This document shows positions 9,593 through 59,460 of a DNA stretch of 64,000 nucleotides, one piece after another (positions within the stretch are counted from its first letter, which is position 1; each line of letters opens with the position of its first letter). Under the pieces are notes generated by a model. The model saw only the letters and a list, made by a program, of their open reading frames with translations, had not been told where the DNA came from and ran no database searches. The translations under genes and the position numbers were made by a program. The stretch lies in the NCBI RefSeq assembly GCF_006345805.1, contig NC_043003.1, positions 7,254,001-7,318,000 on the forward strand. The letters run 5' to 3'. The DNA is from Octopus sinensis. Taxonomy: Eukaryota.

Positions 9593-10051
9593 AATAGTTT
9601 GAAGGAGGGAGGCGTGACAATATTGACGATAGACTCAGCTGATAAACCGACTCGTCCCACACGTGACAGCAGTTGTTCGACATAAACCCACAGGTCGGAA
9701 ATTGTTGGACACTGCACGAGTGCGTGCAGAACGGTTTCGTCGCTCTGACCGCATCTCGGGCAGGTCGGCCCCGTGTTTCTCGAGCCGTGTCTGTAGAGCT
9801 TATCCCGAACGGGTAGCGCTTCTCGGTAGCACTGCCAGGCCAGGGATCTCTGGAAGTTGTCCATGGGCCCTGGCCCGAAAGTCGTCCCGAACAGGCGGGT
9901 CAGGTATTCCTCGTCGACGTCCAGGTTCGCCCCAAGATCGTCGTCGTACCTCCTCTCCACTAACCCCCTATAGAATGCTTTGGTTGTGATGGAGTCACTC
10001 AAGGTTGACCCAGGACGGCAGAGTTGCTTGAGAGCAACGCGACACTCGCGG
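9593..10051 (-). mobile_element. L1/Tx1-clade LINE ORF2 C-terminal fragment (CCHC zinc finger)
   Basis: WQCYREALPVRDKL..CPRCGQSDETVLHALVQCP. GC-rich island abutting (TATC)n and a truncated SINE-B. Confidence 0.8.
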
Positions 10052-10112
10052 TATAGATAGATGGATAGATAGAGATAAATAGATAGATAGATAGATAGAT
10101 AGAGATAGATAA

Positions 10113-10155
<43 letters not shown>

Positions 10156-10594
10156 GATAGATAGATAGGTAGATAGATAGATAGATAGATAGGAAAATGT
10201 AAGATCCAAGGATCAAGATGTAGGAAGTTAGTAAGTCTCAAGCAGTCTGTAGAAGGTATAAAATAACAACTTTCAGGAAGAATAATGGTTTATTGACGCA
10301 GAAGGTTGAGAATTCTTCCCGTCTCGAAGTACGATAAACAGAAAAAAGTTAATTTTATAGTTGACGGTTAGCAACAGAAGTTGTTGTATATGCGAATAAA
10401 CACCCCAAAAATTAGGAAATGAATTGGATAAAATCCAGGCCACATATGTTTCATAGCTAACGGAACCTCGGATGTAATAAATTATCCAAGCGAGGGGTGG
10501 ACCGCCAGCTACACTCCAGGCCAAAGTTACCCTAACTATATGAAGACTCGTTAGGGATTCTTACCATATTTTTTGGGATATATATATATATATA

Positions 10595-12995: not shown

Positions 12996-13769
12996 TCCTA
13001 TATATATATATATGTGTATCCAACATTATGAAAACTTCCAAATTTTGGCACAAGGCCCGTAATTTTAGGGAAGGGATAAGTAGATTCAGTCGACCCTAGT
13101 ATTCAACTGGTACTTTATTTTATCGACTCTTAGAGGATGAATGGCAAAGTCGACTTCTGCGGAATTTAAACTTAGAACGTAATCAGCCGGAAGAAATACC
13201 ACTAACCATTTTATACACAGCGTTAACGATTCAGCCAGCTTTGACAGGCCTGTATATATATATATATATATATATATGTATTTATATGTGCACACCTCAC
13301 ATACATTTATATATACGTGTGCATATGTGTGTGTAGGTTACGATTTTTTATGTCAAGTGTGAATAAAGTCAATTTAATATTAAAGTGAAGAATCTTTTCT
13401 GCTCTAGGCACAAGGCCCAAAATTTTGGGGGAGGGGGCCAGTCGATTAGATCGATACCAGTACGTAACTGGTACTTAATTCATTGGCCCCGAAAGGATGA
13501 AAAGCAAAGTCGATCTCGGTGGAATTTGAACTCAGAACCTAAAGACAAACGAAATACCTCTAAGCATTTCGTCCGGCGTACTAGTAAAGAAAAAAGAAAC
13601 GTTAGTACACCGGACGAAATGCTTAGAGGTATTTCGTCTGTCTTTAGGTTCTGAGTTCAAATTCCACCGAGATCGACTTTGCTTTTCCTCCTTTCGGGGC
13701 CAATGAATTAAGTATCAGCTTAATAATGAGCAAATGCCTTTTGTATGTATATATATATATATATATATA

Positions 13770-21190: not shown

Positions 21191-21745
21191 TGCCTTGATG
21201 CAGTACCAGGCAGAGGCTCTCATGGCTTCTGATCTAAACTGATTGGAAGTGTTATCATGTACATTGTTTTGTCTTGGTATAAAAGATGGGCTACAGCAAA
21301 TATTCTGCTCAATACCACAGATTTGCTTGTCAGTTGTTTGACCTTAACCAGTTGAGCATGTCCCATAGTGGCTGACGATATGTGCATCTCTGATCACGAG
21401 CAGAAGTAGTGGGGGAGCATCATAGCCATGTGTTGAGAGGGATTCTTTGGGATTTGAATAGTTCACCTCTGGAAACATGGGTGGTTCTTTCAACATCCTT
21501 AAACAACCCTTATTCAGGTACCGTTTGAGCGGGATGGGCTACTCAACCTGAAGAAAATTCTAACTGGGCCCCACCTGCAAGGTCATGTGCTGTTTATCTT
21601 GATATGAGATCACCATGTCGCGCACATATGGTTGTGATGCATGTGCCTGGTGTACCTTTATCAGACGGGTAGTCATGATGGGTATATTGGGCTTCGTATA
21701 CTTTACCCCAGTGTCACTTTGATGGCATGAACTGCTCTCTCACTC
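21191..21745. mobile_element. 555-bp non-coding element embedded in (AAT)n, copy 1
   Basis: Near-identical to 22813-23367, flanked on both sides by (AAT)n. Truncated copies at 29987, 30895 and 31375. Confidence 0.85.
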
Positions 21746-21777
<32 letters not shown>

Positions 21778-21782
21778 TAATA

Positions 21783-21852
<70 letters not shown>

Positions 21853-21853
<1 letters not shown>

Positions 21854-22385
21854 CTTGCCCAGGACATTAATCGTCTGGAAACCGTTCAGCGAGGTGCAAC
21901 CGAGAAAATACCCTCCATCAGGCATTTGCCATATTCTGAACGCCTTACTTCCCTGGGCATTGAAACTCTGACGTCTGGCAGCTGACTTGGCAGACACTCA
22001 TAAAATTATTAACCATCTTACAAACAATAACTCTGAGCACCTTTTCAAACTCCACCTGTCTAACACTCGTGGACATGTTTACAAATCAGAAAACAGCACA
22101 GCTCCTTCCATGACTTTCGGAAACATTTTTTCACGCTAAGTGTTGCTGAAGCATGGAACAAACTGCCGCCGTCAGTTGCTAGTTGTCGGAGCACTGCATC
22201 CTTCAAAACTTCCATGCTTCCTGAGATTCGCCAACACTACACCTGATTTTCTCCCCTCCATACACACGCAAGCATGTATCTGACTCATACACTGTTCGCT
22301 TTCCAGACATTTGTACATTACTGCATATGCTTCATACGCACTTTTGACAAGTCGTGGTGCACCTGAGCACTGTATACAATAATTT
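21853..22385 (+). mobile_element. CR1/L2-clade LINE 3' end
   Basis: Translates DINRLETVQRGAT..LPYSERL..LG..AADL..HKII..NTRGH..FFTL..AWNKLP, followed by a 3' UTR running into (AAT)n. Confidence 0.85.
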
Positions 22386-22389
22386 CATT

Positions 22390-22652
22390 ATTATATATAA
22401 TAAAAATAATAATGATAATAATAATAATAATAATATTAATAATAATAATAATGATAATAATGATAATAATAATAATAATAATAATAATGATAATAATAAT
22501 AATAATGTTAATAATAATAATAATAATAATATAATAATAATAATAATAATAATGATAAAAATAATGATAATATTAATAATAATAATAATAATTATAATAA
22601 TAATGATAATAATAATAATAATGATGATAATAATATAATGATAATAATAATA

Positions 22653-22702
<50 letters not shown>

Positions 22703-22770
22703 TTAATAATAATGATAATTATAATAATAATAATGATGATAATAATAATAATAATATAATAATAATAATA

Positions 22771-22812
<42 letters not shown>
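22390..22812. repeat. (AAT)n microsatellite
   Basis: Direct reading. One of many; (TATC)n tracts lie at about 5570-5670, 10055-10190, 34345-34530 and 63552-63628. Confidence 0.95.
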
Positions 22813-23367
22813 TGCCCTGATGCAATACCAGGCAGTGGCTCTCATGGCTTCTGATCTTAACTGATTGGAAGTGTTATCATGTACATTGTTTTGTCTTGGT
22901 ATAAAAGATGGGCTACAGCAAATATTCTGCTCAATACCACAGATTTGCTTGTCAGTTGTTTGACCTTAACCAGTTAAGCATGTCCCTTAGTGGCTGACGA
23001 TATGTGCATCTCTGATCACGAGCAGAAGTAGTGGGGGAGCATCATAGCCATGTGTTGAGAGGGATTCTTTGGGATTTGAATAGTTCACCTCTGGAAACAT
23101 GGGTGGTTCTTTCAACATCCTTAAACAACCCTTATTCAGGGACCGTTTGAGCGGGATGGGCTACTCAAACTGAAGAAAATTCTAACTGGGCCCCACCTGC
23201 AAGGTCATGTGCTGTTTATCTTAATATGAGATCACCATGTCGCGCACATATGGTTGTGATGCATGTGCCTGGTGTACCTTTATCAGACGGGTAGTCATGA
23301 TGGGTATATTGGGCTTCGTATATTTTACCCCAGTGCCACTTTGATGGCATGCACTGCTCTCTCACTC
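22813..23367. mobile_element. 555-bp non-coding element embedded in (AAT)n, copy 2
   Basis: Same length, same ends and same orientation as 21191-21745. Confidence 0.85.
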
Positions 23368-23419
<52 letters not shown>

Positions 23420-23835
23420 GTAATAAAATCCCATAGCACTGAATTCTTTTTAGGAATCCAGACAGTCTTAATTGTGAAAGAAAACAAACTATGCTGGATC
23501 ATAGACACAGCATGCCCAGCTGACAACAAGGTATGCGATAAGGAAGAAAGAAAAGTTGAGAGATATGACAGGTTAGCTTGAGAAGTTAAGCAGTTGTGGT
23601 CGCTGAAAAAGGTAGCAGTAGTACCAATAATTGCCGGAGCCCTGGGAACCGTGAGCAAATATATCGAGAAGTACGTGGAACAAATAGGGGCTGCAATAAG
23701 GGTGGAGAACTTGCAGAAAACAGCACTGCTTGGAACCGATCGAATACTCCGCATGGTGCTCGAAAAATAAGAGGTGTTACCTTAGTTTACGGGTAGTGAA
23801 CAGCTGACACTGTAGTACATCTCCAGCGTTAAAAG
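23420..23835 (+). mobile_element. R4/Dong-like LINE 3' end (restriction-like endonuclease), in (AAT)n
   Basis: Translates CWIIDTACPADNKV..KVERYDRL..VVPIIAGALGTV..LQKTALLGTDRILR, a typical RLE C-terminus. Confidence 0.85.
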
Positions 23836-23873
23836 GCAATGATAATAGAAGCAAAGGCAATGAAAATAATAAA

Positions 23874-23929
<56 letters not shown>

Positions 23930-23930
<1 letters not shown>

Positions 23931-24700
23931 CTTTTCTAATAAAGGCACAATACAGAAGGGACAAACAAGGACAGACAAAGGGATTAAGTCGATTACATCG
24001 ACCCCAGTGCGTAACTGGTACTTAATTTATCGACCTCGAAAGGATGAAAGGTAAAGTCGACCTCGGCGGAAGTTGAACTCAGAATGTAGCGGCAGACGAA
24101 ATACCTATTTCTTTACTACCCACAAGGGGCTAAACACAGAGAGGACAAACAAGGACAGACAAAGGGATTAAGTCGATTACATCGACCCCAGTGCGTAACT
24201 GGTACTTAATTTATCGACCTCGAAAGGATGAAAGGTAAAGTCGACCTCGGCGGAAGTTGAACTCAGAATGTAGCGGCAGACGAAATACCTATTTCTTTAT
24301 TACCCACAAGGGGCAAAACACAGAGAGGACAAACAAGGACAGACAAAGGGATTAAGTCGATTACATCGACCCCAGTGCGTAACTGGTACTTAATTTATCG
24401 ACCTCGAAAGGATGAAAGGTAAAGTCGACCTCGGCGGAAGTTGAACTCAGAATGTAGCGGCAGACGAAATACCTATTTCTTTATTACCCACCAGGGGCTA
24501 AACACAGAGAGGACAAACAAGGACAGACAAAGGAATTAAGTCGATTACATCGACCCCAGTGCGTAACTGGTACTTAATTTATCGACCCCGAAAGGATGAA
24601 AGGTAAAGTCGACCTCGGCGGAAGTTGAACTCAGAATGTAGCGGCAGACGAAATACTGCTAAGCATTTCACCCGGTGTGCTAACGTTTCTGCCAGTTTCC
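23930..24700 (-). repeat. Tandem tetramer of SINE-A, 184-bp period
   Basis: Junction GAAATACC|TATTTC at 24105, 24289 and 24473. All units share variants such as GGAAGTTGAAC and AATGTAGC. Confidence 0.95.
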
Positions 24701-30592: not shown

Positions 30593-31018
30593 CATTATTA
30601 AGAAAGCAGTGAGCTGGCAGAGTCGTTAGCACGCTGGATGAAATGCTTAGCGGTATTTCGCCCGTCACTACGTTCTGAGTTCAAATTCCGCCGAGGTTGA
30701 CTTTGCCTTTCATCCTTTCGTTAAGTACCAGTGAAACACTGGGGTGTCAATGTAATCTACTAGTCCCCTCCCCACAAATTTGAGGCCTTGTGCCTCCAGT
30801 AGAAAGGATTATTATTATTATTATTATTATTATTGTTATTATTATTATTTATTATTATTATTATTATTATTATTTATTATTATTATATTATATTGAGTGA
30901 GAGAGCAGTGCATGCATCAAAGTGACACTGGATACAAATATACGAAGCCTAGTATACCCATCATGACTACCCGTCTGATAAGGGTACACCAGGCACATGC
31001 ATCACAACCATATGTGCA

Positions 31019-31052
<34 letters not shown>

Positions 31053-31324
31053 TTATTATTATTATTATTATTATTATCATTATTAAGAAAGCAGTGAGCT
31101 GGCAGAGTCGTTAGCACGCTGGATGAATGCTTAGCGGTATTTCGCCCGTCACTACGTTCTGAGTTCAAATTCCGCCGAGTTGACTTTGCCTTCATCCTTT
31201 CGTTAAGTACCAGTGAAACACTGGGGTGTCATGTAATCTACTAGTCCCCTCCCCACAAATTTGAGGCCTTGTGCCTCCAGTAGAAAGGATTATTATTATT
31301 ATATTATTATTATTATTGTTATTA

Positions 31325-31374
<50 letters not shown>

Positions 31375-31500
31375 GAGTGAGAGAGCAGTGCATGCCATCA
31401 AAGTGACACTGGGATACAAATATACGAAGCCTAGTATACCCATCATGACTACCCGTCTGATAAGGGTACACCAGGCACATGCATCACAACCATATGTGCA

Positions 31501-31531
<31 letters not shown>

Positions 31532-31541
31532 GTTGTTGTTG

Positions 31542-31576
<35 letters not shown>

Positions 31577-31592
31577 GTTGTTGTTGTTGTTG

Positions 31593-31634
<42 letters not shown>

Positions 31635-32170
31635 TATGTTTGACTTTTGCTTTATATTTGTATAAGTTGGCTCCAAGTCTCACACAGAGAGCTCAAGAAA
31701 CAAGTTAGAAGTTCATGTTGGTGTTATGCCTAGGGTGCCATATATTTGGTTTTGTACTTAGTGTTGTACTAGTAAATGTCTAAAAAACCATAAGAAAATT
31801 GTGTTCGTTTTAAAACATGAGATTACATAGAAAGTATTTTGCGTAGGATATGGGAAGTTCCCATGAGCACTACCTTTTGAATTTCTGCCATTTTGGGGTT
31901 TCCTATTATTATTATTATTATTATTATTATATTATTATTATTATTATTATTATTATCATTATTAAGAAAGCAGTGAGCTGGCAGAGTCGTTAGCACGCTG
32001 ATGAATGCTTAGCGGTATTTCGCCCGCCGCACTACGTTCTGAGTTCAAATTCCGCCGAGGTTGACTTTGCCTTTCATCCTTTCGTTAAGTACCAGTGAAA
32101 CACTGGGGTGTCAATGTAATCTACTAGTCCCCTCCCCACAAATTTGAGGCCTTGTGCCTCCAGTAGAAAG
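29987..32170. repeat. Composite tandem duplication of three TE fragments separated by (ATT)n
   Basis: Order X-R-K-X-K-X-R-K. X = 555-bp element end (29987, 30895, 31375), R = R4 3' end (30263, 31634), K = SINE-A variant (30601, 31086, 31965). Confidence 0.9.
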
Positions 32171-40948: not shown

Positions 40949-42994
40949 TGTAATGTGTGTGTGTGTGCTTGTATCTGTGTTTCCCACTACTGCTTGACAA
41001 CTGGTATTGATGTGTTTACGTCCCTGTAATATAACCATTCGGCAAATAGAGACCGATAGAATATGTCGTGGGGTCGATTCATTCGAATGAAAATTCTTCA
41101 AGGCGATGCCCCAGCATGGCCGCAGTCTATTGACTGAAACAAATAATTGATAAAAGTAAAAGATATAGACGCAGTCATAGCTATGTGGTTAGGAAGTTCG
41201 CTTTGTAACCACATGGTTTTGGGTTCAGTCCCACAGTACGGCACCTAGGATAAGAGTCTTCTACTAGAGCTGGCCAATGCCTTGTGAGTGAAGTTGGTAG
41301 ATGGAAACTGTATGGAAGCCCGTCATATATATATGTGTGTGTGTATGTGTGTGTGTGTATGTGTGTGTGTGTGTGCCTGCGTTTTTGTGTTTGTGTCTCA
41401 TTACTGCTTTATAACCGGTGCTCGTTTGTTTATGTCCTCGTAACCTTGTTGTTTAGCAAAGGAGATTCGATAGGATAAGTACTAGACTTAAAAATGAAAG
41501 AAAGAAAAAAAGTACTGAAGTCTCTTTGGTCGACTAAAACTCCACGAGTAGTGCCCCAGCTTGGCCGCAGTCCATTGACTGAGTCAAAGAAAATGACGAA
41601 AGGAAATATTTCTTCTGTGATATTTGAAGCTGGTGAATTCAATATTTCCTGTCCCTGGCGCGGTGCCGTGTAAAACTAGTGAATAGTGAAGAAATCAATC
41701 GACCAGGATATCTCTTCCATGGTCCTTTTATATGACATGACAGGAAACGTTGTCAGTGATATCATATCTATGTTGGCACTCCGTCGGTTGTGGAGGCGCA
41801 ATGGCGAAGTGGTTACTCTTTCTTCCTGTTTCTGTTGTACCTGTATTTCAAATGGCCAGCCTTGTCACAGTCTGTGTCACGCTGAATCTCACCCCAGCAA
41901 ACTATGTTAAGGGGTACGCGTGTCTGTGGAGTGCTCAGCCACTTACACGTGAATTTCACGAGCAGGCTGTTCCGTTCGTCGGATCAACTGGAACCTTCGT
42001 CGTCGTAACCGACGAAGTGCCACGATATATACATACATATGTGGAGGGGCAATGGCTCATTGGTTAGGACAGCAGACTCGCGTCGTGGGTTTGCGGTTTC
42101 GATTCCCAGACCGGGCGTTTTGAGTGCTTATTGAGCGAAAACGCCTAAAGCTCTACAGGACTCCAACAGAGGGTGGTGGCGAACCCTGATGTACTCCTTC
42201 ACTACAAATTTCTCTCACTCTTTCTTCCAGTTTCTGTTATACCTATATTTCAAAGGGGTCAGCCTTGTCGCACTCTGTGTCACGCTGAATCTCATCCTCG
42301 AGAACTACGTTAAGGGGTACACGTGACTGTAGAGTGCTCAGCCACTTGCACGTTAATTTCACGAGCAGGCTGTTCCGTTGATCGGATCAACAGGAACCCT
42401 CGTCGTCGCAAGCGACGGAGTGCCATGACGACTCTGTCGGTTACAACAAGAAGGGTTCGAGTTGATCCGCTCAACGGAACAGCCTGCTCGTGAAATTAAC
42501 GTGCAAGTGGCTGAGCACTCCACAGTCACATGGTTCTCTGGGAGACTCAGTGTGACGATGAAGGTGACAAAACTGGCCCTTTGAAATGCAGGTACAACTC
42601 ATTTTTGCCAGGTGAGTGGAATTGAGCAATGTGAAATAAAGTGTCTTGCTCAAGAGCACAATATACCGTTAGGGAATTGAACTCACGACCGTAAGTCGAA
42701 TATCCGAACCGCTAAGCCACGCGGTGTGATATCATGATAATCCAATGCGTTACAATCTTTTATCACTTATATTTTACCTGTTTCAGTCTGATGAAGAGCA
42801 ATTACCCTGGAACTAGTCCCTGAGTGCTGGCTTTGTTGGGTAGAGGTGCTTATCTGCCTCGTTTGAAAACCTGAGGACACTGAACGCATGTGTCTCGTAG
42901 CCAGCTAGAAACGGTGTTTCTCGGGGCTAAATAGCAGTAGCATTCTTCCCTTTCCTGGGACTGTAGCATTAAGTTGGCAACAAACCATCACCTT

Positions 42995-43014
42995 AATATT
43001 ATATATATATATAT

Positions 43015-43082
<68 letters not shown>

Positions 43083-43496
43083 ATATAATATATATATATA
43101 TATATATATAGATATAAGATATATAGAGTATATAATGGATATATATACTATATAGATATATATGTATAGATATATATATATAATATATATGATATATATA
43201 TATGCTATATATAGATATATATATATATATGATCTGAATATAGATATATATATATATAGTATATATATATAATATTTACATGCATATATGTTTGTATATA
43301 TATGCATATATATACATATACATAGGTATGTATATTATACATACATAAAAATTTATACATACATGTACATAGATACATATATATATGCATATGAATATTA
43401 TATATATATATATACACACCACACATATATATATAATATTTATATGCATATATATATTTATATGCATATATACATATATACACACACACACACATG

Positions 43497-43537
<41 letters not shown>

Positions 43538-43684
43538 ATTTGAAAACCCCACTAGAATGGGAGAAAGCGATAATGATCTGAATGATATTATCTGAATGAT
43601 ATGATATATATGTAAAAAATGTAATATATAAATAAATACTGTAAATATGAACCATCCGATCTTCTGATTACCTCATTTCTTCTA

Positions 43685-43736
<52 letters not shown>

Positions 43737-43926
43737 TAAACATTTAACATACATGACATAGATAAATATATATATGCATATGAATATTATTTATATATAT
43801 ATATAATATATAGAATACACATATATAAATATACACATACATATATATATACACATACATACATATATATATATATACCACACACAACACACATATATGT
43901 ATATATATATGTATATATAATATATA

Positions 43927-43966
<40 letters not shown>

Positions 43967-44190
43967 TATATATGATATATATATGCATATAAATATATAT
44001 ATGCATATGAATATTATAATATATATATATATACATATATATATATACATACATATATATACACACATATATATATATTATATATACTTACATATATATA
44101 ATATACACATATATATACAATATGTATGTAAATATATATATATATATATATATATAGATATATATATATATTATATATATATATATATAA
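42995..44190. repeat. ~1.2-kb degenerate (TA)n low-complexity tract
   Basis: Almost pure A/T dinucleotide sequence with scattered C/G and one short non-repetitive interruption at about 43540-43685. Confidence 0.95.
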
Positions 44191-44324
44191 AGTGATGGTT
44201 TGTTGCCAACTTAATGTCGCAGTCTATTATACTATAATGGAGAACGCTACTTATTTATTAGTTATGTAACAATTACTAAAAGCACTAAAAGAAAGCAATT
44301 ATTTAAGGGTTGACCATCTGGAAA

Positions 44325-45320: not shown

Positions 45321-47487
45321 ATTGCTCACTGACAAAACTTCGTGCCGCATCACTTTTGTGAAGTTTTGTCAGTGAAAACAGGTCGCGGTTTCAAAGCGAC
45401 GGAAATATTTTGACACAAATGAAATTTAAATGATGAAGTGAAACAAACTGTTTTCGTGTGTTCTTCAATGGCTTACAAACATCTTCCACGCTGCAATTGT
45501 TTTTGCTTCAGCACACGATCTCAGATCAAGTCACTTGCTATGCAAGTACATCTCCGTAATTTTTAAAAATCACTGCGGATAGGTGCCAGCAATGACCTTC
45601 TCAGGCTCTCCAATGTTTTAATTTCTAAACAGAAACAATTGCAAAAAATTCATAATTTCTCATATTTTCTTTTTTTTATACCATACAAATGTATTTATGG
45701 GGGGGGATTATATTCTATTCTAGACACAAGGCCTGAAATTTTTGGGGGTGGGGACCAGTATAGATCGACCCCAGTATACAACTAGTACTTAATTTATCGA
45801 CCCCGAAAGAATGAAAAGTAAAGTCGACCTCGGCGGAATTTGAACTCAGAACGTATCGGCAGACAAAATACCGCTAAGCATTCCGCGCGGCATGCTACGT
45901 TTCTGCCAGTTTGCATAAGCTGTAAATATTCTCTTCTACTCTAGGTACAAGGTCCGAAATTTTGGGGGAGGGAGCCAGTCGATTAGATCGATCCCAGTAC
46001 ACAACTGGTACTTAATCTATTGACCCGAAAGGATGAAAGGTAAAGTCGACCTCGGCGGAATTTGAAATCAGAACGTAGCGGCAGACGAAATACCTATTTC
46101 TTTACTGACCACAAGGGGACTAAACACAGAGAGGACAAACAGATTAAGTCGATTATATCGACCCCAGTGCGTAACTGGTACTTATTTCATCGACCCCTAA
46201 AGGATGAAAGGCAAAGTCGACCTCTGTGGAATTTGAACTCAGAACGTATCGGCAAACGAAATACCGCTAAGCATTTTGCCCAGCGTGTTAACAGTTGTGC
46301 CAGCTCGCCGCCTTATTATCGTTTCTCTCCGTATATATGTACTAGCAGCTAAGCCCGGTTTCACCCGGTCTGTTCGGATGATGTGGCTGTGATCGTTTTC
46401 GGCTAGGCATAATCTATAACAGCGTTTCTCAACCTTATCATTTCGGGTCCCCTGTTTCTGTTAGAGCTTCCAGCTGTATGAAAATTTCCTGACCCCCGCC
46501 CCACTGTCAGAAAAATAGCTTCAGGAGTTGTGAAGAACGAATTTGTACGTAGTCTGTTTCTGAAAGCTATTCTGTTGAACCTCTGTCTAATCATTAAAAC
46601 ATTGGGCGATCTTTCGATATGGGAACACACGACTTTCACTTACAAACCACTTATAAATCACGTGTGTTTGGTGGTGGAAGCACTCCGTCGGTTACTACGA
46701 CGAGGGTTCCGGTTGATCCGATCAACGGAACAGCCTGCTCGTGGAATTAACGTGTAAGTGGCTGAGCACTCCACAGACACGTGTACCCTTAATGTAGTTC
46801 TCGGGGATATTCAGCGTGACACCGAGAGTGACAAGGCCGGCCCTTTGAAATACAGGTACAACAGAAACAGGAAGTAAGAGTGAGAGAAAGTTGTGGTAAA
46901 AGAGTACAGCAGGGATCACCACCATCCCCTGCCACGTGTGTCTAATTACATTTTTGAAGATGATCATCGGTTTCTGTAAAAAAAAATTTTTAATATGGGG
47001 TTGGGTGGAAATGGGATCTTTTGAAGTCGGCGTGAAAGCGAAAGAGACAGAGAGAGCGCCATTGTATGAGTAAAGTCCTTTTGAAGTTGGCGTGAAGCGG
47101 AAGAATTGATATGAGTGCGCGCGTGTGAGTGTGTGAGTGTGTGTGTTTGATGGGGGGGGGTGCGAGACAGAATGTGTGGTGTGTATGTGAATTGTTTTTG
47201 TTAGTGTGTGTGAAGAGGCAGAGAAGGTAATGTTGCTGGTGTGTGGTGTGTGTGTGTATGTGTGTGTGAGAGAGAAAGAGAGAAAGAGACATGTATGTAT
47301 GTATAAATGGCTTCAGTGACACACACACACACACACGCACACACACGCACGCACGCACGCACGCACGCACGCAGGTTGTTATGTATGTATGGCTTTGGCT
47401 GACTGTCATCCTGTACTCCCCTTGCTGCTAACGAAATGGTATATGCCGGCTGTGTGAGCAACTGGTTGTTTTCATAGCGGAACATTG

Positions 47488-51293: not shown

Positions 51294-51527
51294 TATTTCT
51301 TTATTGCCCACGAGGGGCTAAACATAGAGGGGACAAACAAGGACAGACAAACGGATTAAGTCGATTATATCGACCCCAGTGCGTAACTGGTACTTATTCA
51401 ATCGACCCCCGAAAGGATGAAAGGCAAAGTCGACCTCGGCGGAATTTGAACTCAGAACGTAACGGCAGACGAAATACGGCTACGCATTTCGCCCGGCGTG
51501 CTAACGTTTCTGGCAGCTCGCCGCCAT
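51294..51527 (-). mobile_element. Full-length SINE-A flanked by a 94-bp direct repeat
   Basis: Complete head to tail. Flanks 51200-51293 and 51530-51623. Confidence 0.9.
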
Positions 51528-52179
51528 AGATATCTTTAATACTAGAACACCGGAAAACTCACCATTCTAAACTACTCTCAAAATGGGGCCGACAGACCCT
51601 TTTGCAACAATGATGGTCTTATAGGGTACGCAAACACTTGCGCTCAACGCAAATGATACAGAGAATGACACTAAAAGTGCTGGATGAAAACAATACAAGC
51701 CACTATAACTCTTCTCTTGTCATCAACTTCTGCTCCTCACAAACATATTCAGAGCAATTCCTAGTTTTATATTTTGTTAAAAACAACAACAAAGACAATA
51801 CTGTATAAACAATACAATAAATTATTTATGGATTATGCCGGACCAGCCTAGGCTCCAGTTTCTTTATCAAACTACAATAAACTACAAAGAAACCCAAAAA
51901 AGATAAACAGCGCCCTGCGCTTTCGCTGTGGGTTATACACAGACCCCCACCCCACCACGTACTACTAACAGAACAAAACAAAAAAAAAGACTGAAAACGA
52001 AAGACTACTGGGTATAGGAAGGGATCAGGTTTGTGACCGCAGCAACTTCATGTCCCGCAATTTCTGTTACCACGTGAACCCCACCCCTCCAAATACCCGG
52101 GTACGGACACCACGTTCCAGACACTAGTACAAAATTAAAACAAACAAAAACACTCTCTCCCCGACACTGCATAGGGAAT

Positions 52180-52782: not shown

Positions 52783-53445
52783 CTATGCATTGTTTAGGAA
52801 CTGTAGCTCTTTGTGGAGATCTTCGAGGAGAGATTGGAAATTAGAGCTCATGTCAACATCGTAAGACCCATTCTCCTCGCTGTAATCGAAGCGAACAGAC
52901 GGAAAATGATTCGAGTCGGGGGATAAATCCTTGTAACTTTGTAACCCTGTGTCAGGCACAATGTATTGATCGTGCCAGTCGTCATTGAGGAGATCTGTAA
53001 CCTTCTGAGAGTTTGAGAAATCGCTGTCACTGAAAGTGATATTCTGAGCTGTTTCGGGACAGTATCGCTTATTCGGCAGAGAATCAGGCAGACATATTTC
53101 AGAACTGGAACGTTTTATTTTCAAACTAATATCCGAAGTGTCTGACAGCAAGGAGTCATTGGGCGACAAAGAGCTACAGTTGTCTGAAGCCGATGAACTA
53201 TTAAAATTTTCTAAGATGGGAATGTCAATATTCGAACTGTATATGCTATCCGAGCTGTTTACGTTGACCAATTTTTTATAAATTGTCTTATCACAATACC
53301 ACGATTCAAACGATTTCGAACCCGTTGCTTCAGGGATTTCGTGTTGAGTGCAACATACATCATAATTGATCGACTCACTACCAACGAAAACCGGTGGGGG
53401 ATTAAAGATGTCCCCGCTGCGTGTGCTCTCATCGATGATGCTCAA
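52783..53445 (-). CDS. 220-codon Ser/Asp-rich ORF, probable frameshifted C-terminal tail of the ETS protein
   Basis: Long stop-free frame in AT-rich DNA with a composition typical of transcription-factor low-complexity tails. It starts at TTG, has no ATG of its own at the 5' end, and overlaps the ETS stop by a 1-nt frame offset next to a G4 run (53447-53450). Confidence 0.65.
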   Translation of the reverse strand: MSIIDESTRSGDIFNPPPVFVGSESINYDVCCTQHEIPEATGSKSFESWYCDKTIYKKLVNVNSSDSIYSSNIDIPILENFNSSSASDNCSSLSPNDSLLSDTSDISLKIKRSSSEICLPDSLPNKRYCPETAQNITFSDSDFSNSQKVTDLLNDDWHDQYIVPDTGLQSYKDLSPDSNHFPSVRFDYSEENGSYDVDMSSNFQSLLEDLHKELQFLNNA

Positions 53446-53610
53446 AGGGGAGTTTCGTCGCTGTTGAAAGTTTCTCTATATTTACTTGGGTATTCAAACG
53501 ATGATTGGTGATGACTGCTCGACTTCATGAATTTGCTATCTTTAAAATCTGTGGTAAACTTATAGAGATGTCTGTCAACTTTCAACAATTTGCCTTTGTC
53601 GATGTAATAC
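53442..53610 (-). CDS. ETS-domain gene, last exon: ETS C-terminal strands (YYIDKGKLLKVDRHLYKF) to in-frame TGA
   Basis: Acceptor tttctcttctgcAG at 53611. The phase 2 junction gives RRAL-G-YYIDKG..LYKF, matching ETS RALRYYY..LVYKF. TGA at 53444-53442 gives 179 aa as assembled. Confidence 0.88.
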
Positions 53611-54739
53611 CTGCAGAAGAGAAATATATAATATTACTATTATTGTTTTTGTCGTTGAAAAGAAGTGAATATACTTCAAGGATAAAACTCTCGGAGAATA
53701 CGTGCAAATGCAAACAAGGAAAGTAATTGCGAGTCAACGAGGGAAGCCTGTACATGGTTTCTCGAACTGCTAGGAACAACAGCAAAATCTCCCTCAAGTT
53801 ACACCATATCATCATAAAAAAAGGAAGAGCATATTGGGGTATGTAGACCTAGAGATATGCCCGAAAATATAATAACTTGCTCAGGTGCTGCGCTGTGGGA
53901 ATGAACTCCAAACCACATGGTTACAAAGTAAGCTTCTTAACCACACAGCCATGCGTGCGTCTGCGCATGTAAAGTAATGTAAAGATCAAAGGCGGCGAGC
54001 TGGCAGAAATGTTAGCACGCCGGGCGAAATGCTTAGCAGTTATTTCGTCTGCCGTTACGTTCTGAGTAATATAGCGCAGGTAGCAAGATACACAACGTTG
54101 GAAAACCGGTACCCACCCGATACAACCGGCTGCAATCGTCAATAACCTGACTTAAGTTTCTTGTGGTATACGTTACTTTTGCTCTTAGGAACACCTAAAC
54201 CTCATCCAAGCTCTTTGCCTGCCTTTTCTTTTTTTTAATTTTTAATGTGAGGTATTGTACTTATATAGCAAATCATATACAAATAACGAAAATCAAAGAG
54301 ACATCAATTATTTAATATCATTAGTTTGACAGAATCGTTAGCAATGTTTCTTCTAGCTTTACGTTCTAAGTGCAAATCCCGCCGAGGTCAACTTTGCCTT
54401 ATATCCTTTCGGGGTCGATAAAATAAATACCAGTTGTGTACTGGGGTTGATGCATTCGACTAACCCCCTCCCACAAAATTTTAGGCTTTGTATTTATAGC
54501 ACAGACGGTTATTATGTTGATACTCAAAAAAGGAAAAAATAGAAAAAAAGTATAACGTTTCAGACATAGTCATTCGTCAGATATTAGAAGACAGTCCAAG
54601 GGGAGATAAGAAAGAGAGGAAAGGAAACGAGACTGAAAGGAGAGAGTCAACAAAAAGCAAACGGGTTAAGTTCACATAATCTAAATTTACAAAAGAAATT
54701 GATTAACAAGTAATGAGATTAACAATAAGCACAACTCAC

Positions 54740-54941
54740 CCTAAAGCCCTTCTTAATTTGTTATGATCCATGCTGAAGTTGTTCTTTTCTCTGCCCCATA
54801 AAGTAGCGAGAGTGCTTAAGCAACAAATACGGAACAATCCTTCACTGCGGTTCTCCCATCTGATTATCGCGTTGTTGTCTCTATTATTATCAAGGAGATG
54901 CAAGAGAAAGTGAAAGAGTCGCTTCCCATGGCCAGAACCAC
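54740..54941 (-). CDS. ETS DNA-binding domain exon, ESE/ELF (ELF3/EHF/ELF5-like) subtype
   Basis: LFHFLLHLL..IIRWENRSEGLFRI..LATLWGREKNNFSMDHNKLRRAL aligns by eye with EHF-type LWEFIRDIL..IKWEDRSEGVFRF..VAQLWGKKKNNSSMTYEKLSRAM. Acceptor gttttgtttttAG, donor GG|GTGAGT, 202 nt, phase 1 to phase 2. Confidence 0.92.
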
Positions 54942-55275
54942 CTAAAAACAAAACAAAAAAACCCCGATTATATGGATTGATGTGGTTTTTGTCAACACTG
55001 TTTCTGGGCATGTGTGTGTAATTATGAGGAATTATGATAAACACGCGTGTATGTGATTTGTTCTCTGCGTACGTTTCACCATTGTGGATGCTGAGCCACA
55101 ACGGATCATTAGGGGAGCACTTTGTTGCATTATGTTATACAGATCCAACGCACTGTGTTACAACGATCATAATTTCTTCTAGAGGAAGCAAAGTGGACGG
55201 AAAAACATTGTATGGAATTCTAAACTGATTAGTAGCAGTCGTACATCTAACTATACACACAAGATACACTATGAT

Positions 55276-55373
<98 letters not shown>

Positions 55374-55380
55374 GTATATG

Positions 55381-55428
<48 letters not shown>

Positions 55429-55441
55429 CATATACATATAC

Positions 55442-55472
<31 letters not shown>

Positions 55473-55676
55473 TATATATATATATATGTATATATATATG
55501 CTTGGACTCTGGTCAACTGAGGATGCGCATTTTATGCAAGCTGTTCTTGGAGCATATTAATACAATATTGCATGTAATCTATGCAGCATTCAGCAATTAA
55601 GAGATGAGAATGATGCGTTGAAACAATTGCAGTATATTCATATATACATACACACACACACCACACACACACACAC

Positions 55677-56090: not shown

Positions 56091-56225
56091 TAGTTTCATA
56101 ATCTGAAATGGCCGAGGACATTAGGCAATCATTGTGATCGTTGTTATTCTCAAGTAAAAGAGACAATTCTGGGATAGCGACTTCACGTGTGCTGTTTTCT
56201 TCCTCTTGTTCTTCCCGCTTTTCAA
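56091..56225 (-). CDS. ETS-domain gene, acidic exon (EKREEQEEENSTREVAIPELSLLLENNNDHNDCLMSSAISDYET)
   Basis: Acceptor tgtctttacAG, donor ACTA|GTAAGT. 135 nt, phase 1 to phase 1, no stops, joins in frame to the ETS exon. Too short for the ORF track. Confidence 0.8.
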
Positions 56226-57449
56226 CTGTAAAGACAAACAGTTCATGCTTATTTCTTAAAGTGTACCTTTGTATAGCTCTATAGAACTATCAAGATCTAG
56301 AGTGAAAGAGAGGGAGAGTGAGAAAGGTAGAGAAAGAGAGGGAGAGGGAGAGAGAGAGAGAGCGGTGGAAGAAAAGAGAGAGAAAGTTGTGACGTTCATG
56401 ATTTTTCTAAAGGGACAAACTTTTAACTTTTGAAATGACTTATTGTTAAATTTGTATGAGATTCTGAAAAATGACCAAAATCCTTCCTGTTTTTTTCTTC
56501 CCCAAATGAAGGCGCATGTATGGCTGTGTGGTTAAGAAGCCCGTTTTGAAACCATGTGGTTTCAGGTTCAATCCCACTGTGCGGCACCTTGAGCAAGTGT
56601 CTCCCACTATAACATAAGGCTGAATAATGCCTTTTTGGAAACTATGTGGAAACCCGTGGTATATGTGTGTGTGCATGTGTATTTTTGTATGTGTGTTTGA
56701 GTGCCTTTGCTTGACAACCGTTGTTGGTTGTAATCTAATGGTTCGGCAAATTAATCCGATGGAATAGTACTACACTTAGAAAGAAAATACTAGGTGGTGC
56801 TCTAGCATGGCCGTAGTCCAATGACTGAAACAAGTAAACGAAAAGATAAAAGGCATAAAAGATATGATTTAGAATTAAGGCCAAACTTCCAATCCTAACA
56901 CCAGGATATGGATTTAATATGCATTTCGTCTCTAGCACAGTTCTCTCCCCTTGTTTAGCACTCTTCTTATCATGTCCATTTATACGCCATGTTTTCTTTT
57001 GCACCAGCGTTCACATTTTGCCACAAATTATGCGTTTAAAAACTTTTTTTGAAACCAGGTATTTATTTCAGCTCACTATATAAACTACCGCATTGATTTA
57101 TGACATAAATATCGTCGGTGACCCCCAAAGAAGGCAAAGTGTTAAATACTTATAAACTCTTTCACGTTCGTTAATAGGTGATGCATTTACTGAGGTACAA
57201 TCTGAATATTTTGATAGCGTAAAGTACTGATTCTCGATTTTGTATGTATGTGTAAGGAATGTACCACATTTTTCATTGCTACGTGAAAAATAATAAGACA
57301 TTTGAGATCCACTAAAGTTTCTTTGGGAAAGGAAGCATACACAATTTTATTTGCTAGTCGGGTGATAAAATTGTCAGTATATTCATATTTCATTCTCTGT
57401 TTAAATGTTGAATATTACAATAATTTATTACTATTTTGCACTTATCCTC

Positions 57450-58925
57450 ATGGCTACCTCATGCTGTCGAGAATGATTGTCTTCCCTGCTCAGTTGTGCA
57501 TTCGTTGATAGAATAACGCAGATATTTCCATAATGAACGTAAATAGTGGTTTGTATTAGACGACAAGCACCAGTATCACTTTCTTTCGCTTGATTTCTTT
57601 CAAGATGTTCAGGTCTTCCTTATTCACAGTTTCAGCTCCTTGATGCACAAATAGTTTTTCCCTTAAAGGTCCGCTACTGGCAGCTTTTACAATTTTATCA
57701 AGGTTCTGTTTCATCAGATCCGGAAAGCGTTTTTTTTCTTTTCTAGCTCTGATAATTTTTCTTCTATCAGCTGAAAGTAGAAGACTTGTTTTGGAAGGGC
57801 TTATAACCACCTGGAAGAGAGGACCAGTACATCTGAGTTGGATTTTTTTAAATGACAATTACTTCACAGCTGATCGTTTTTGTTTCACTGAGGACATTGA
57901 AGTTTGTTCGATAGTCCTTCCAACTAATTTCAAGAAGGTTTTGAAGTCCAGTGCTGGAGAAAATATTTCAAGCTTTCAATAAGTAGTCCATCTTTCAGAT
58001 CTATAGAGAAGAACTGGCACAACTACGGAACAGATTACAACTCGACGTTTCTGAAATCTCGAAAGCAACCGAAAGCTGCACCAGCACAGGGAAGTGTGCA
58101 CTGGATCCATGTTAACATTAAAAGACAATTCATTTACGAGATATAGGAAATGGTAAACGTTTTTGAGAACCTTTTCATATAGTTCAGATGGGGGAACTTG
58201 AAAGTTGATGTGGTGAGGAGAAGATTGTAAAAAACCTGTCTTCTTCAAACTGATGTTTAGTACAAAGTAGATATCCGCGCGATTAATTACTTAGATGTTA
58301 GTTTGTAGGTTCCTCTCTGCGCTCGTTTATGAAGCAATATTAATATTCGTATATCGAAAGTCTAGCAGTGAGATTGTAGCCATATTCTTGAATTTGAATC
58401 TGCAGAAGTTGAAGAGATTTTCACCGACTCGGTAGACAATATCTATGCAATAAGTGATAACTTGGCCCTGGTGAGATGCATGATTGCGGGGGATGAATGA
58501 ATAGAACAAAGAGGCTTGGTGCAAGGATGGTCTCTGCGATACTCCGTTACTGCCATTACCAAGTCTCGAAATTTTGAATTTCTTTGCACAACCAACCGTT
58601 TCAAGAATGCAGCAGAAAAGACCGCGAATGACAATATTGAATCCCTCCGTGACATCAACAATGATCAACTACTATGGATGCTACTGTTTTTGAATTTGTA
58701 TAAATGCCGTCCATCTTCACAGCCATTGGATTGCAATGCTTACCTTCTTCCGCCCATTTCACCATTGAAGTCCTGGTTCATGGATCGTACTTAGTCTGGA
58801 ACCTCCCCCACAACCTTTCCGCCATGGGTGACCCTGCCAGGAACATGAAGCTCCCTGCGGCATAGCTTGTGAGGTCATTGGAACACGCAAGCCCTCTCAC
58901 CACGACAAGGTGACGATCCGAGAGG
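57450..58925 (-). mobile_element. Internally deleted RTE-clade LINE relic inside ETS intron 1
   Basis: RTE/Expander-like 5' UTR (TCACCTTGTCGTGGTGAGAGGGCTTGCGTG) joined to degenerate RT (IVDVTEGFN, NGV, YRVGENLFN, LLDFRYTN, VVVPVLLYRSERWTTY, QLRCTG, KKRFPDLMKQNL). Many stops and frameshifts. The 3' boundary is approximate. Confidence 0.82.
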
Positions 58926-59426: not shown

Positions 59427-59460
59427 CAAAACAATCCCAGGGAAAAGCAAAATCCTCCAT
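59427..59460 (-). CDS. ETS-domain gene, first identified coding exon (MEDFAFPWDCF; whole exon 59479-59427)
   Basis: Acceptor tcatctctcaacAG at 59480, donor TTTG|GTAAGT at 59426, ATG in aatatcATGG context. Ends in phase 1, matching the next exon. The frame is open back to the acceptor, so a further upstream coding exon is possible. Confidence 0.7.

What the first reader, a model, noticed from the sequence alone, without database searches (positions are those of the whole stretch)
53560..54941. ETS domain lacking an invariant DNA-reading arginine: possible pseudo-ETS or altered-specificity factor
Seen: after splicing, the recognition helix reads KLRRALGYYI, against canonical KLSRALRYYY. The second invariant Arg is Gly (split codon GG|G), the first signature Trp is Phe (LFHFL), and the MxY motif is MDH. 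Known: the two Args of helix 3 (Ets-1 R391/R394) contact the GGA core. Inference: the protein binds GGAA poorly or differently and could be a lineage-specific dominant-negative or protein-interaction ETS paralog. Intact splice sites and open frames in all four exons argue against an old pseudogene. The change is AGG to GGG, the same outcome A-to-I editing would produce, which is notable in a cephalopod but speculative.
Basis: partly seen in the sequence, partly recalled or inferred. Interest (0 to 1): 0.72.

Follow-up and report, generated by a model that had tools for sequence, protein, structure and literature searches.

The report
Octopus ETS gene missing DNA-reading arginine
This is a real, octopus-only member of the ETS transcription-factor family. 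In Octopus sinensis and O. vulgaris, a genuine DNA change has replaced one of the two arginines that read the GGA core with glycine, so the protein probably binds its usual target poorly or differently. It is a curiosity rather than a new kind of system.

Summary
On the minus strand, the spliced exons 54941-54740 and 53610-53442 encode a full-length ETS domain (Pfam PF00178, 73 bits). Its recognition helix reads KLRRALGYYI, with split codon GG|G, LFHFL and MDH.

The window is Octopus sinensis, gene XP_029639090.1 ('Elf-5-like', 179 aa).

- **The Gly is not an assembly error.** An independent O. vulgaris assembly has the same GG|G. O. bimaculoides has AG|G (Arg). So this is a genomic A-to-G change in the vulgaris/sinensis lineage.
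- **Three other deviations are older.** W-to-F, Y-to-H and YYY-to-YYI are shared by all three octopuses.
- **The gene is restricted and divergent.** It is known only from octopuses, looks ESE-like (ELF5/EHF/ELF3), has no PNT domain, and has no relative above about 46% identity.
- **It is constrained.** dN/dS for the ETS domain is about 0.13.
The O. sinensis sequence has a 1-nt deletion near 53456 that removes a conserved tail of about 220 aa. The tail is intact in O. vulgaris, O. bimaculoides and a fourth octopod. I cannot tell whether the deletion is real or an assembly error.

The most likely reading is a functional but DNA-binding-weakened or altered ETS factor (Etv1 R394A loses about 1000-fold affinity). 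Early pseudogenisation is the main rival. Nothing supports RNA editing.

The parts
59427..59460 (-). Coding part of exon 1 (isoform X1): MEDFAFPWDCF plus the first base of a split Val codon. Donor G|gtaagt.
   Evidence: tblastn of P0153 against the window; exon coordinates and splice context
58744..58765 (-). Alternative first coding exon of isoform X2 (MVKWAEE, donor G|gtaagc)
   Evidence: Six-frame search for the P0154 N-terminus; P0154 sequence
56091..56225 (-). Exon 2: acidic N-terminal region VEKREEQEEENSTREVAIPELSLLLENNNDHNDCLMSSAISDYET(S)
54740..54941 (-). Exon 3: ETS domain helix 1, helix 2 and most of recognition helix 3 (GSGHGKRLFHFLL...KLRRALG). Ends with GG of the split Gly codon.
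54741..54741 (-). The derived base. It is G in O. sinensis and O. vulgaris and A in O. bimaculoides. It is the first base of the split codon (AG|G Arg to GG|G Gly) and also position -2 of the 5' splice site.
   Evidence: DNA alignment of exon 3; O. vulgaris exon end AAGGGCTTTAGG|GTGAGT
53611..54739 (-). Intron 3 (gtgagt...ctgcag). It contains a tRNA-derived SINE-like element, also present at the orthologous place in the fourth octopod.
53442..53610 (-). Exon 4 as annotated: third base of the Gly codon, end of helix 3, the beta-hairpin wing (YYIDKGKLLKVDRHLYKF), a linker and a premature stop TGA at 53444-53442
53452..53456 (-). Frameshift site: one base missing relative to O. vulgaris, O. bimaculoides and the Logan octopod (GACG-AAAC against GACGGAAAC, GAAGAAAAC and GAAGAAAAT)
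52783..53451 (-). Out-of-frame continuation of exon 4: a 222-codon Ser/Asp-rich tail ending ...LLEDLHKELQFLNNA, plus its stop. It is in frame with the ETS domain in the orthologues. It differs from the O. vulgaris tail at 3 of 666 nucleotides (about 98.6% protein identity).

Best explanation
This is a genuine protein-coding gene of Octopus sinensis (RefSeq 'ETS-related transcription factor Elf-5-like'). It is known only from octopuses. It encodes a short acidic N-terminus, one divergent ETS domain closest to the ELF5/EHF/ELF3 group, no PNT domain, and, in the orthologues, a tail of about 220 residues that is conserved in blocks.

Shown:
- The domain is predicted to keep the ETS winged-helix fold.
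- It evolves under purifying selection.
- An A-to-G transition in genomic DNA replaced the second GGA-reading arginine of helix 3 (Ets-1/Etv1 R394) with glycine. This happened in the lineage leading to O. vulgaris and O. sinensis, after the split from O. bimaculoides.
- Three other near-invariant positions (W338F, Y386H, Y397I) and an unusual extra Arg at position 390 were already present in the common ancestor of the three octopuses.

Inferred:
- The ancestral protein already had a non-canonical DNA-contact surface, so loss of R394 was tolerated.
- The present protein has greatly reduced affinity for canonical GGA(A/T) sites. It either reads a relaxed or different core using R391, Y395 and the retained backbone contacts (K379, K388, K399, K404), or acts mainly through protein contacts of the ETS fold and the conserved tail.

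The copy in this window also has a 1-nt deletion that ends the protein 34 residues after the domain. It sits in the last exon, so the transcript would escape nonsense-mediated decay. This is either a very recent O. sinensis change or an assembly error.
For: - Pfam Ets 73 bits, full profile length. Best solved relatives are ELF5, EHF and ELF3.
- AlphaFold2 model: pLDDT 83-97 over residues 61-150, with helix 3 spanning 116-129 and including G124. Foldseek matches ETS domains at TM 0.79-0.88 and rmsd 1.1-1.5 A.
- Species and gene identity.
- O. vulgaris has GG|G and an intact 399-aa ORF. O. bimaculoides has AG|G and an intact 402-aa ORF.
- dN/dS between O. sinensis and O. bimaculoides: ETS domain 0.12-0.135, tail 0.25-0.37, whole gene 0.24-0.33. 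All are significantly below neutral.
- The ETS domain is identical in O. sinensis and O. vulgaris, with 1 synonymous change.
- In the nearest 155 ETS domains the column is R in 153.
- Etv1 mutants: R394A raises Kd 1021-fold and R391A 44-fold. Y397F, K379A and K404A give no detectable binding (PMC4447949).
- An exhaustive HMMER search of 1.84 billion representatives found nothing closer than 38-46% identity outside the octopus cluster.
- No PNT or other Pfam domain.
Against: - No expression or binding data could be reached. No assembled transcript of this gene appeared in the protein collections, and no paper mentions it.
- The purifying selection is averaged over both lineages since the bimaculoides split. 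It does not prove constraint after the Arg was lost.
- O. sinensis and O. vulgaris differ by only 9 coding substitutions (4 synonymous, 5 non-synonymous). That is too few to test.
- In exon 4, the vulgaris branch has 21 non-synonymous to 11 synonymous changes. This is not distinguishable from neutral (p=0.12).
- The frameshift in O. sinensis, if real, fits decay.
- Gly in the middle of a recognition helix, together with Y397I, could mean no DNA binding at all.
Confidence: 0.55

Rival explanations
1. Early pseudogenisation in the vulgaris/sinensis lineage. Arg-to-Gly killed DNA binding, constraint relaxed, and the O. sinensis frameshift is the next step of decay. The open frames are simply not yet eroded.
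For: - Loss of a residue that is R in 153 of 155 related domains and whose Ala mutant loses about 1000-fold affinity.
- A frameshift in O. sinensis removes a conserved tail.
- The vulgaris-branch exon 4 has 21 non-synonymous to 11 synonymous changes plus a 3-codon deletion, not different from neutral (p=0.12). The O. bimaculoides branch has 9 to 13 (p=0.0005).
- No transcripts were found in the collections searched.
Against: - O. vulgaris keeps a complete 399-codon ORF and all splice sites.
- The ETS domain has no amino-acid difference between O. sinensis and O. vulgaris.
- The tail differs at 3 of 666 nt between those two species, against about 1.5% in flanking non-coding DNA.
- ETS-domain dN/dS is 0.13, which leaves little room for a long neutral phase.
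- The branch difference is not significant (Fisher p=0.097). The fourth octopod's branch is just as fast (45 non-synonymous to 17 synonymous), so a fast tail is not specific to the Gly lineage.
Confidence: 0.25
2. DNA binding is largely preserved because the unusual arginine at position 390 (KLRRALG, where other ETS domains have Ser, Gly or Ala) takes over part of the lost contact. It lies one helical turn before the lost Arg and on nearly the same face. The gene would then be an ordinary activator with slightly shifted specificity.
For: - R at this column occurs in only 1 of 155 other domains. That one (P0112, KLRRSLN) also lacks the second Arg.
- R390 predates the loss, since it is present in O. 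bimaculoides. That order fits a permissive-then-loss sequence.
- Most backbone-contact residues are retained.
Against: - This rests on helix geometry alone. No model with DNA was made.
- Y397I and Y386H also hit phosphate contacts whose conservative mutation abolishes Etv1 binding.
- Glycine lowers helix stability.
Confidence: 0.12
3. The A-to-G change hard-wires an A-to-I recoding event. The Arg codon is edited to Gly in octopus RNA, and the vulgaris/sinensis genome fixed the edited state.
For: - The change is A-to-G at the first base of AGG. O. bimaculoides still has A.
- Exchange between edited A and genomic G is discussed for coleoids (PMC6881472 and PMC8382921, listed; only their titles and abstracts were seen).
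Against: - No editing data for this site could be reached.
- 251 nt of pre-mRNA around the site fold no better than shuffled sequence in either species (z=-0.04 and +2.33).
- A-to-G is simply the commonest kind of point mutation.
Confidence: 0.03
4. The Gly is an assembly or annotation artefact of the O. sinensis genome.
For: O. bimaculoides has Arg. The same O. sinensis exon carries a suspicious 1-nt deletion.
Against: - The independent O. vulgaris assembly GCA_951406725.2 has the same GG|G, in a locus that differs from the window by about 1.5% elsewhere.
- No alternative splice site restores Arg.
Confidence: 0.02

Closest known systems
ESE subgroup of ETS factors (ELF5, EHF, ELF3)
   Same: They are the best-scoring solved relatives (62, 61.5 and 55 bits). 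Shared motifs include RWE(N/D)RSEG(L/V)FR, WG..KNN.SM and (K/R)VD.R. RefSeq and ENA name the octopus proteins 'Elf-5-like' and 'ETS homologous factor'.
   Different: - Only about 40-46% identity.
- No PNT domain.
- The ETS domain is not C-terminal. It is followed by a tail of about 250 residues in the orthologues.
- W338F, Y386H, S390R, Y397I and, in two species, R394G.
- The tree does not place it inside any subgroup with support.
Laboratory and disease mutants of the ETS DNA-binding domain (Etv1 R394A; human ETV6 R399C)
   Same: - Etv1 R394A hits the same residue as the octopus change. Its Kd rises 1021-fold (PMC4447949).
- ETV6 R399C lies in the ETS domain and shows reduced repression of ETS-site reporters (PMC4477877). 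That R399 is the second helix-3 Arg is my own reading of the numbering, not tested here.
   Different: Those are single changes in otherwise canonical domains and are deleterious. The ETV6 mutant interferes through its PNT oligomerisation domain, which the octopus protein lacks. Here the change sits in an already divergent domain, and both reference genomes of the vulgaris/sinensis pair carry it.
Tara metagenome ETS-like protein P0112 (315 aa, encoded without introns)
   Same: It is the only other domain among the 155 that lacks the second Arg (KLRRSLNYQV). It shares the rare Arg at position 390 and the WGREKN and H-F-hydrophobic helix-1 motifs. It also has an ETS domain followed by a Ser/Asn/Asp-rich tail of about 230 aa. 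It groups with the octopus clade (support 0.91).
   Different: Only 41% identity in the domain. The tail is not detectably similar. There is no intron at the split-codon position. The source organism is unknown, and the grouping may be long-branch attraction.
Id/Emc-type paralogues of DNA-binding families that lost base-contacting residues (functional analogy, from general knowledge)
   Same: A folded family domain is retained under selection while DNA-reading residues are missing.
   Different: Id proteins act through a defined dimerisation interface. No partner or interface is known here, and the analogy was not tested.

Membership tests
ETS-domain transcription factors (Pfam PF00178) | Sequence match to the ETS-domain profile above the curated threshold, over the full domain length | tested here: met
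   73 bits against a cut-off of 26.9, profile positions 1-80 of 81. Orthologues score 69.6-72.5 bits.
ETS-domain transcription factors (Pfam PF00178) | Winged helix-turn-helix fold (three helices, four-stranded sheet) | tested here: met
   Prediction only. AF2 pLDDT 83-97 with the order H-H-E-E-H-H-E-E. Foldseek to ETS structures gives TM 0.79-0.88 and rmsd 1.1-1.5 A.
ETS-domain transcription factors (Pfam PF00178) | Two invariant arginines in helix 3 that read the two G of GGA (R391, R394) | tested here: not met
   R391 is present. R394 is Gly in O. sinensis and O. vulgaris and Arg in O. bimaculoides. The column is R in 153 of 155 relatives.
ETS-domain transcription factors (Pfam PF00178) | Three conserved tryptophans and the conserved tyrosines of M-x-Y and R-Y-Y-Y | tested here: not met
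   Two of three Trp are kept (RWEN, LWGR). The first is Phe. MDH replaces M-x-Y, and GYYI replaces RYYY.
ETS-domain transcription factors (Pfam PF00178) | Sequence-specific binding to a GGA(A/T) core | not testable with these tools
   Needs EMSA, PBM or SELEX. The Etv1 mutant data predict a large loss.
ESE subgroup (ELF3/ELF5/EHF) | ETS domain closest to ESE members | tested here: inconclusive
   The top three solved hits are ELF5, EHF and ELF3, but by a margin of only about 10 bits over ELK1 and ERG. The tree gives no supported placement.
ESE subgroup (ELF3/ELF5/EHF) | N-terminal PNT (SAM_PNT) domain | tested here: not met
   No Pfam hit other than Ets in the 399-, 402- and 464-aa orthologues at E up to 1.
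ESE subgroup (ELF3/ELF5/EHF) | ETS domain at the extreme C-terminus | tested here: not met
   The orthologues carry about 250 residues after the domain. Only the frameshifted O. sinensis model ends soon after it.
Processed or unitary pseudogene | Disabling mutations (frameshift, stop, lost splice sites) | tested here: inconclusive
   One 1-nt deletion, found in O. sinensis only, truncates the tail. All GT-AG sites are intact. O. vulgaris and O. bimaculoides are intact. Whether the deletion is an assembly error is undecided.
Processed or unitary pseudogene | Neutral evolution (dN/dS about 1) | tested here: not met
   ETS domain 0.12-0.135 and whole gene 0.24-0.33. p=0.0009 and 1e-6 against neutrality. 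Power is lacking for the time since the Arg loss.

The most novel reading that the evidence does not exclude
A naturally occurring ETS domain that stays under purifying selection after losing the second GGA-reading arginine. It would have moved to a new DNA specificity or a DNA-independent role. The pre-existing Arg at position 390 would be the permissive change. A second, unrelated lineage (the Tara protein with KLRRSLN) shows the same pair of changes.
Probability: 0.25. Interest if true: 0.6.

Novelty: new variant of a known kind. Interest (0 to 1): 0.38.

Why it matters
The two helix-3 arginines are treated as invariant across the ETS family. A constrained natural domain without one of them would be useful for two reasons. 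First, it comes with a built-in comparison: the O. bimaculoides orthologue keeps Arg and differs at only 7 of 88 domain residues. That pair is a ready-made experiment on how a deeply conserved DNA-reading surface can drift. Second, it would show whether ETS folds can be reused for something other than GGA recognition. If the gene is instead decaying, it is an ordinary example of the turnover of a young, lineage-restricted transcription-factor paralogue. Either way, the RefSeq model of 179 aa in O. sinensis is probably not the full protein of this gene family.

Tried and rejected
- **Exon-3 search in other species.** A search with the exon-3 peptide, meant to read the codon in more species, found no candidate. 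The fourth octopod (Logan runs SRR11869385 and SRR11869390) is therefore known only for exon 4. Its species could not be identified from the literature.
- **Literature.** The gene and protein accessions appear in no paper searched.
- **RNA structure as a proxy for an ADAR substrate.** No signal.
- **Branch-specific relaxation.** The three-taxon counts hint at faster protein change on the vulgaris branch. The contrast with O. bimaculoides is not significant (p=0.097), and the fourth octopod is equally fast. I do not use it as evidence for decay.
- **Assembly quality.** I counted isolated 1-bp indels between O. sinensis and O. vulgaris. There are about 10-12 per 10.5 kb, against 165 substitutions. 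That ratio is ordinary, and the frameshift lies in a GG rather than a long homopolymer. Error and real change cannot be separated this way.
- **A 10-nt 'intron' (A|GTAAATATAG) or any other intron linking the two frames of exon 4.** Rejected, because the orthologues read straight through.
- **A second ETS copy or a PNT exon in the window.** None found.
- **The locus of P0088,** the next neighbour in the tree, is not on record.
Full report
**What is in the sequence.** The feature lies on the minus strand. Exon 3 (54941-54740) begins after a ttttag acceptor and ends GCT TTA GG|gtgagt. Exon 4 begins at 53610 after ctgcag. Spliced, they read GSGHGKRLFHFLLHLLDNNRDNNAIIRWENRSEGLFRICCLSTLATLWGREKNNFSMDHNKLRRALG|YYIDKGKLLKVDRHLYKF. 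The Gly codon is GG (54741-54740) plus G (53610). No nearby alternative donor or acceptor would give Arg.

The peptide matches Pfam Ets (PF00178) at E=2.6e-20 and 73 bits, against a cut-off of 26.9, over profile positions 1-80 of 81. Its best solved relatives are ELF5, EHF and ELF3. In those alignments G faces the second Arg of RALRYY, F faces the Trp of LWEF, and H faces the Tyr of MTY.

**How unusual it is.** An exhaustive HMMER search of 1.84 billion cluster representatives gave 2680 ETS hits. I examined the 155 domains of the nearest 150 proteins:

| Position (Ets-1/Etv1 numbering) | Residue here | Residue in the 155 relatives |
|---|---|---|
| R394 | G | R in 153, gap in 1, N in 1 |
| W338 | F | W in 143 |
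| Y386 | H | Y in 144 |
| Y397 | I (of GYYI) | Y in 144 |
| S390 | R (of KLRRALG) | R in only 1 (S 134, G 11, A 6) |

The domain is therefore atypical at five positions, not one.

**Identity of the gene.** An exact look-up places the window in Octopus sinensis GCA_006345805.1, chromosome CM016865.1. The gene is XP_029639090.1, 'ETS-related transcription factor Elf-5-like isoform X1', 179 aa. It has four coding exons:
- 59460-59427;
- 56225-56091;
- 54941-54740;
- 53610-53442.

Isoform X2 uses an alternative first exon at 58765-58744. All introns are GT-AG. The window holds no second ETS copy. The full-length orthologues have no PNT or other Pfam domain.

**Orthologues settle the question of error.**
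- *O. bimaculoides* XP_014787929.1 (402 aa) reads KLRRALRYYIEKG. Its exon 3 ends GCA TTA AG|gtgagt, so the codon is AG|G.
- *O. vulgaris* CAI9725215.1 (399 aa) comes from an independent assembly (GCA_951406725.2). It reads KLRRALGYYIDKG, with exon 3 ending TTA GG|GTGAGT and exon 4 starting G TAT.

The two loci differ by about 1.5% in non-coding sequence, so they are independent sequences. The Gly is therefore a real genomic A-to-G transition at 54741. It arose in the vulgaris/sinensis lineage after the split from O. bimaculoides. LFHFL, MDH, YYI and the extra Arg at 390 are shared by all three species and are older.

Directly after the annotated stop (53444-53442), a 222-codon ORF follows in another frame, down to 52786 with its stop at 52785-52783. 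It is the conserved C-terminal tail of the gene. In O. vulgaris, O. bimaculoides and a fourth octopod (Logan genomic contigs L001 and L002), exon 4 is one continuous ORF from YYI(D/E)KGK to the end.

The window lacks one base at about 53456: AGCGACG-AAAC against AGCGACGGAAAC in O. vulgaris. The tail is conserved in blocks. Examples are SKS(F/Y)ESWYCDK, LK(I/L)KRS.SEICLPD.LPNKR.CPET, DDWH and the terminal LLEDLHK(E/D)LQFLN(N/D)A. It has dN/dS 0.25-0.37.

Between O. sinensis and O. vulgaris the tail differs at only 3 of 666 nt, less than the 1.5% seen in flanking DNA. So the frameshift is either very recent or an assembly error. The background of isolated 1-bp indels between the two assemblies is ordinary, and the site is a GG rather than a long homopolymer. 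I cannot decide between the two.

**Is the gene alive?**

| Comparison | dN/dS | Non-synonymous / synonymous codon changes | p vs neutral |
|---|---|---|---|
| ETS domain, O. sinensis vs O. bimaculoides | 0.12-0.135 | 7 / 11 | 0.0009 |
| Whole gene, O. sinensis vs O. bimaculoides | 0.24-0.33 | 58 / 48 | 1e-6 |

They exclude an old pseudogene.

They do not prove constraint since the Arg loss. O. sinensis and O. vulgaris differ by only 9 coding substitutions, 4 synonymous and 5 non-synonymous, with none non-synonymous in the ETS domain.

A three-taxon count for exon 4 gave these branch totals:
- vulgaris branch: 21 non-synonymous to 11 synonymous;
- O. bimaculoides branch: 9 to 13;
- fourth octopod: 45 to 17.

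The vulgaris/bimaculoides contrast is not significant (p=0.097). The tail is simply fast-evolving in two of the three lineages.

**Fold.** An AlphaFold2 model built with 88 aligned sequences gives pLDDT 83-97 across the domain. Helix 3 spans residues 116-129 and includes G124, and both termini are disordered. Foldseek matches ETS-domain structures at TM 0.79-0.88 and rmsd 1.1-1.5 A. This is a prediction and is insensitive to point changes.

**Likely consequence.** Cooper et al. [quoted passage not shown] They measured the following:

| Etv1 mutant | Effect on DNA binding |
|---|---|
| R394A | Kd raised 1021-fold |
| R391A | Kd raised 44-fold |
| Y396F | Kd raised about 9800-fold |
| Y397F, K379A, K404A | no detectable binding |

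By position, the octopus protein keeps W375, K379, K388, R391, Y395, Y396, K399, K404 and the wing Arg. It has H at 386 and I at 397 in all species, and G at 394 in two.

My inference is that canonical binding was probably already compromised or re-tuned in the common ancestor. That would explain why losing R394 was tolerated. The present protein would then bind GGA(A/T) weakly, read a relaxed core, or work through protein contacts. The ETS fold is a known interaction module (abstract of PMC3901394).

The Arg at 390 lies one turn before 394 on nearly the same helical face and could partly compensate. This is geometry only and was not tested. A dominant-negative mechanism like that of ETV6 mutants lacks its prerequisite, because there is no oligomerisation domain.

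**Editing.** The G is in genomic DNA of two species, so editing is not needed to explain it. Only O. bimaculoides could edit this A. The surrounding pre-mRNA shows no unusual structure in either species (z=-0.04 and +2.33). I rate a hard-wired editing site at about 3%.

**Relatives.** Outside the octopus cluster, nothing exceeds about 46% identity. In a domain tree, the octopus clade joins P0112 with support 0.91. P0112 is an intron-less 315-aa ETS protein from Tara metagenome scaffolds that also lacks the second Arg (KLRRSLNYQV). Deeper nodes are weak and long-branch attraction is possible.

**Verdict.**
- It is a new variant of a known family, already annotated but uncharacterised.
- Interest is moderate to low. 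It would rise if binding assays showed a selected, altered function.

Noticed in passing
window 16719-18097 (-): Two overlapping ORFs together encode a PIF1-like helicase (PF05970 at E=9e-19 and 2e-35, plus the Pif1 2B domain). A frameshift near 17570-17678 splits them. This looks like a decayed Helitron-type transposon helicase.
   Followed up: partly
window 9526-10212 (-): ORF with a zf-RVT domain (PF13966, E=3e-8), a remnant of a retrotransposon reverse transcriptase.
   Followed up: partly
window 53860-54120 (intron 3) and about 20 other places, e.g. 170-232, 2528-3156, 13530-13656, 24629-24695, 30603-32044, 45844-46314, 51450-51538, 56510-56598: A SINE-like repeat is scattered through the window (76-94% identity). 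Its look suggests a tRNA origin, which I did not check. The intron-3 copy is also present at the orthologous place in the fourth octopod's contig (L001 1-60), so it predates that split.
   Followed up: partly
L006 6001-6948 and L007 7-954 (Tara metagenome scaffolds): P0112/P0156 is an intron-less 315-aa ETS-domain protein of unknown eukaryotic source with KLRRSLNYQV. It was the only other domain among the 155 examined that lacks the second helix-3 Arg, and it shares the rare Arg at position 390.
   Followed up: partly
P0004 and its cluster (ENA and JGI metagenome contigs, 764 aa): A single uninterrupted ORF combines C2H2 zinc fingers with two complete canonical ETS domains. This architecture is unusual, and the organism is unknown.
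   Followed up: no
P0003 (Solemya velum KAL5006673.1, 601 aa): It contains three identical tandem copies of an SPDEF-like ETS half-domain segment. This is probably an assembly or annotation artefact. It inflated the protein's rank in the search.
   Followed up: no
L005 3001-14478 (O. vulgaris): The 464-aa O. vulgaris model (CAI9725214.1) adds 65 N-terminal residues with no counterpart in the other species' models. This is probably an over-extended annotation.
   Followed up: no
window 21700-24100 and 42900-44300, 55250-55520: Long AT-rich trinucleotide and dinucleotide microsatellite arrays, (TA)n and (CA)n. They give long spurious ORFs of Ile, Leu or Tyr runs. Most alignment gaps between O. 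sinensis and O. vulgaris fall in such arrays.
   Followed up: no
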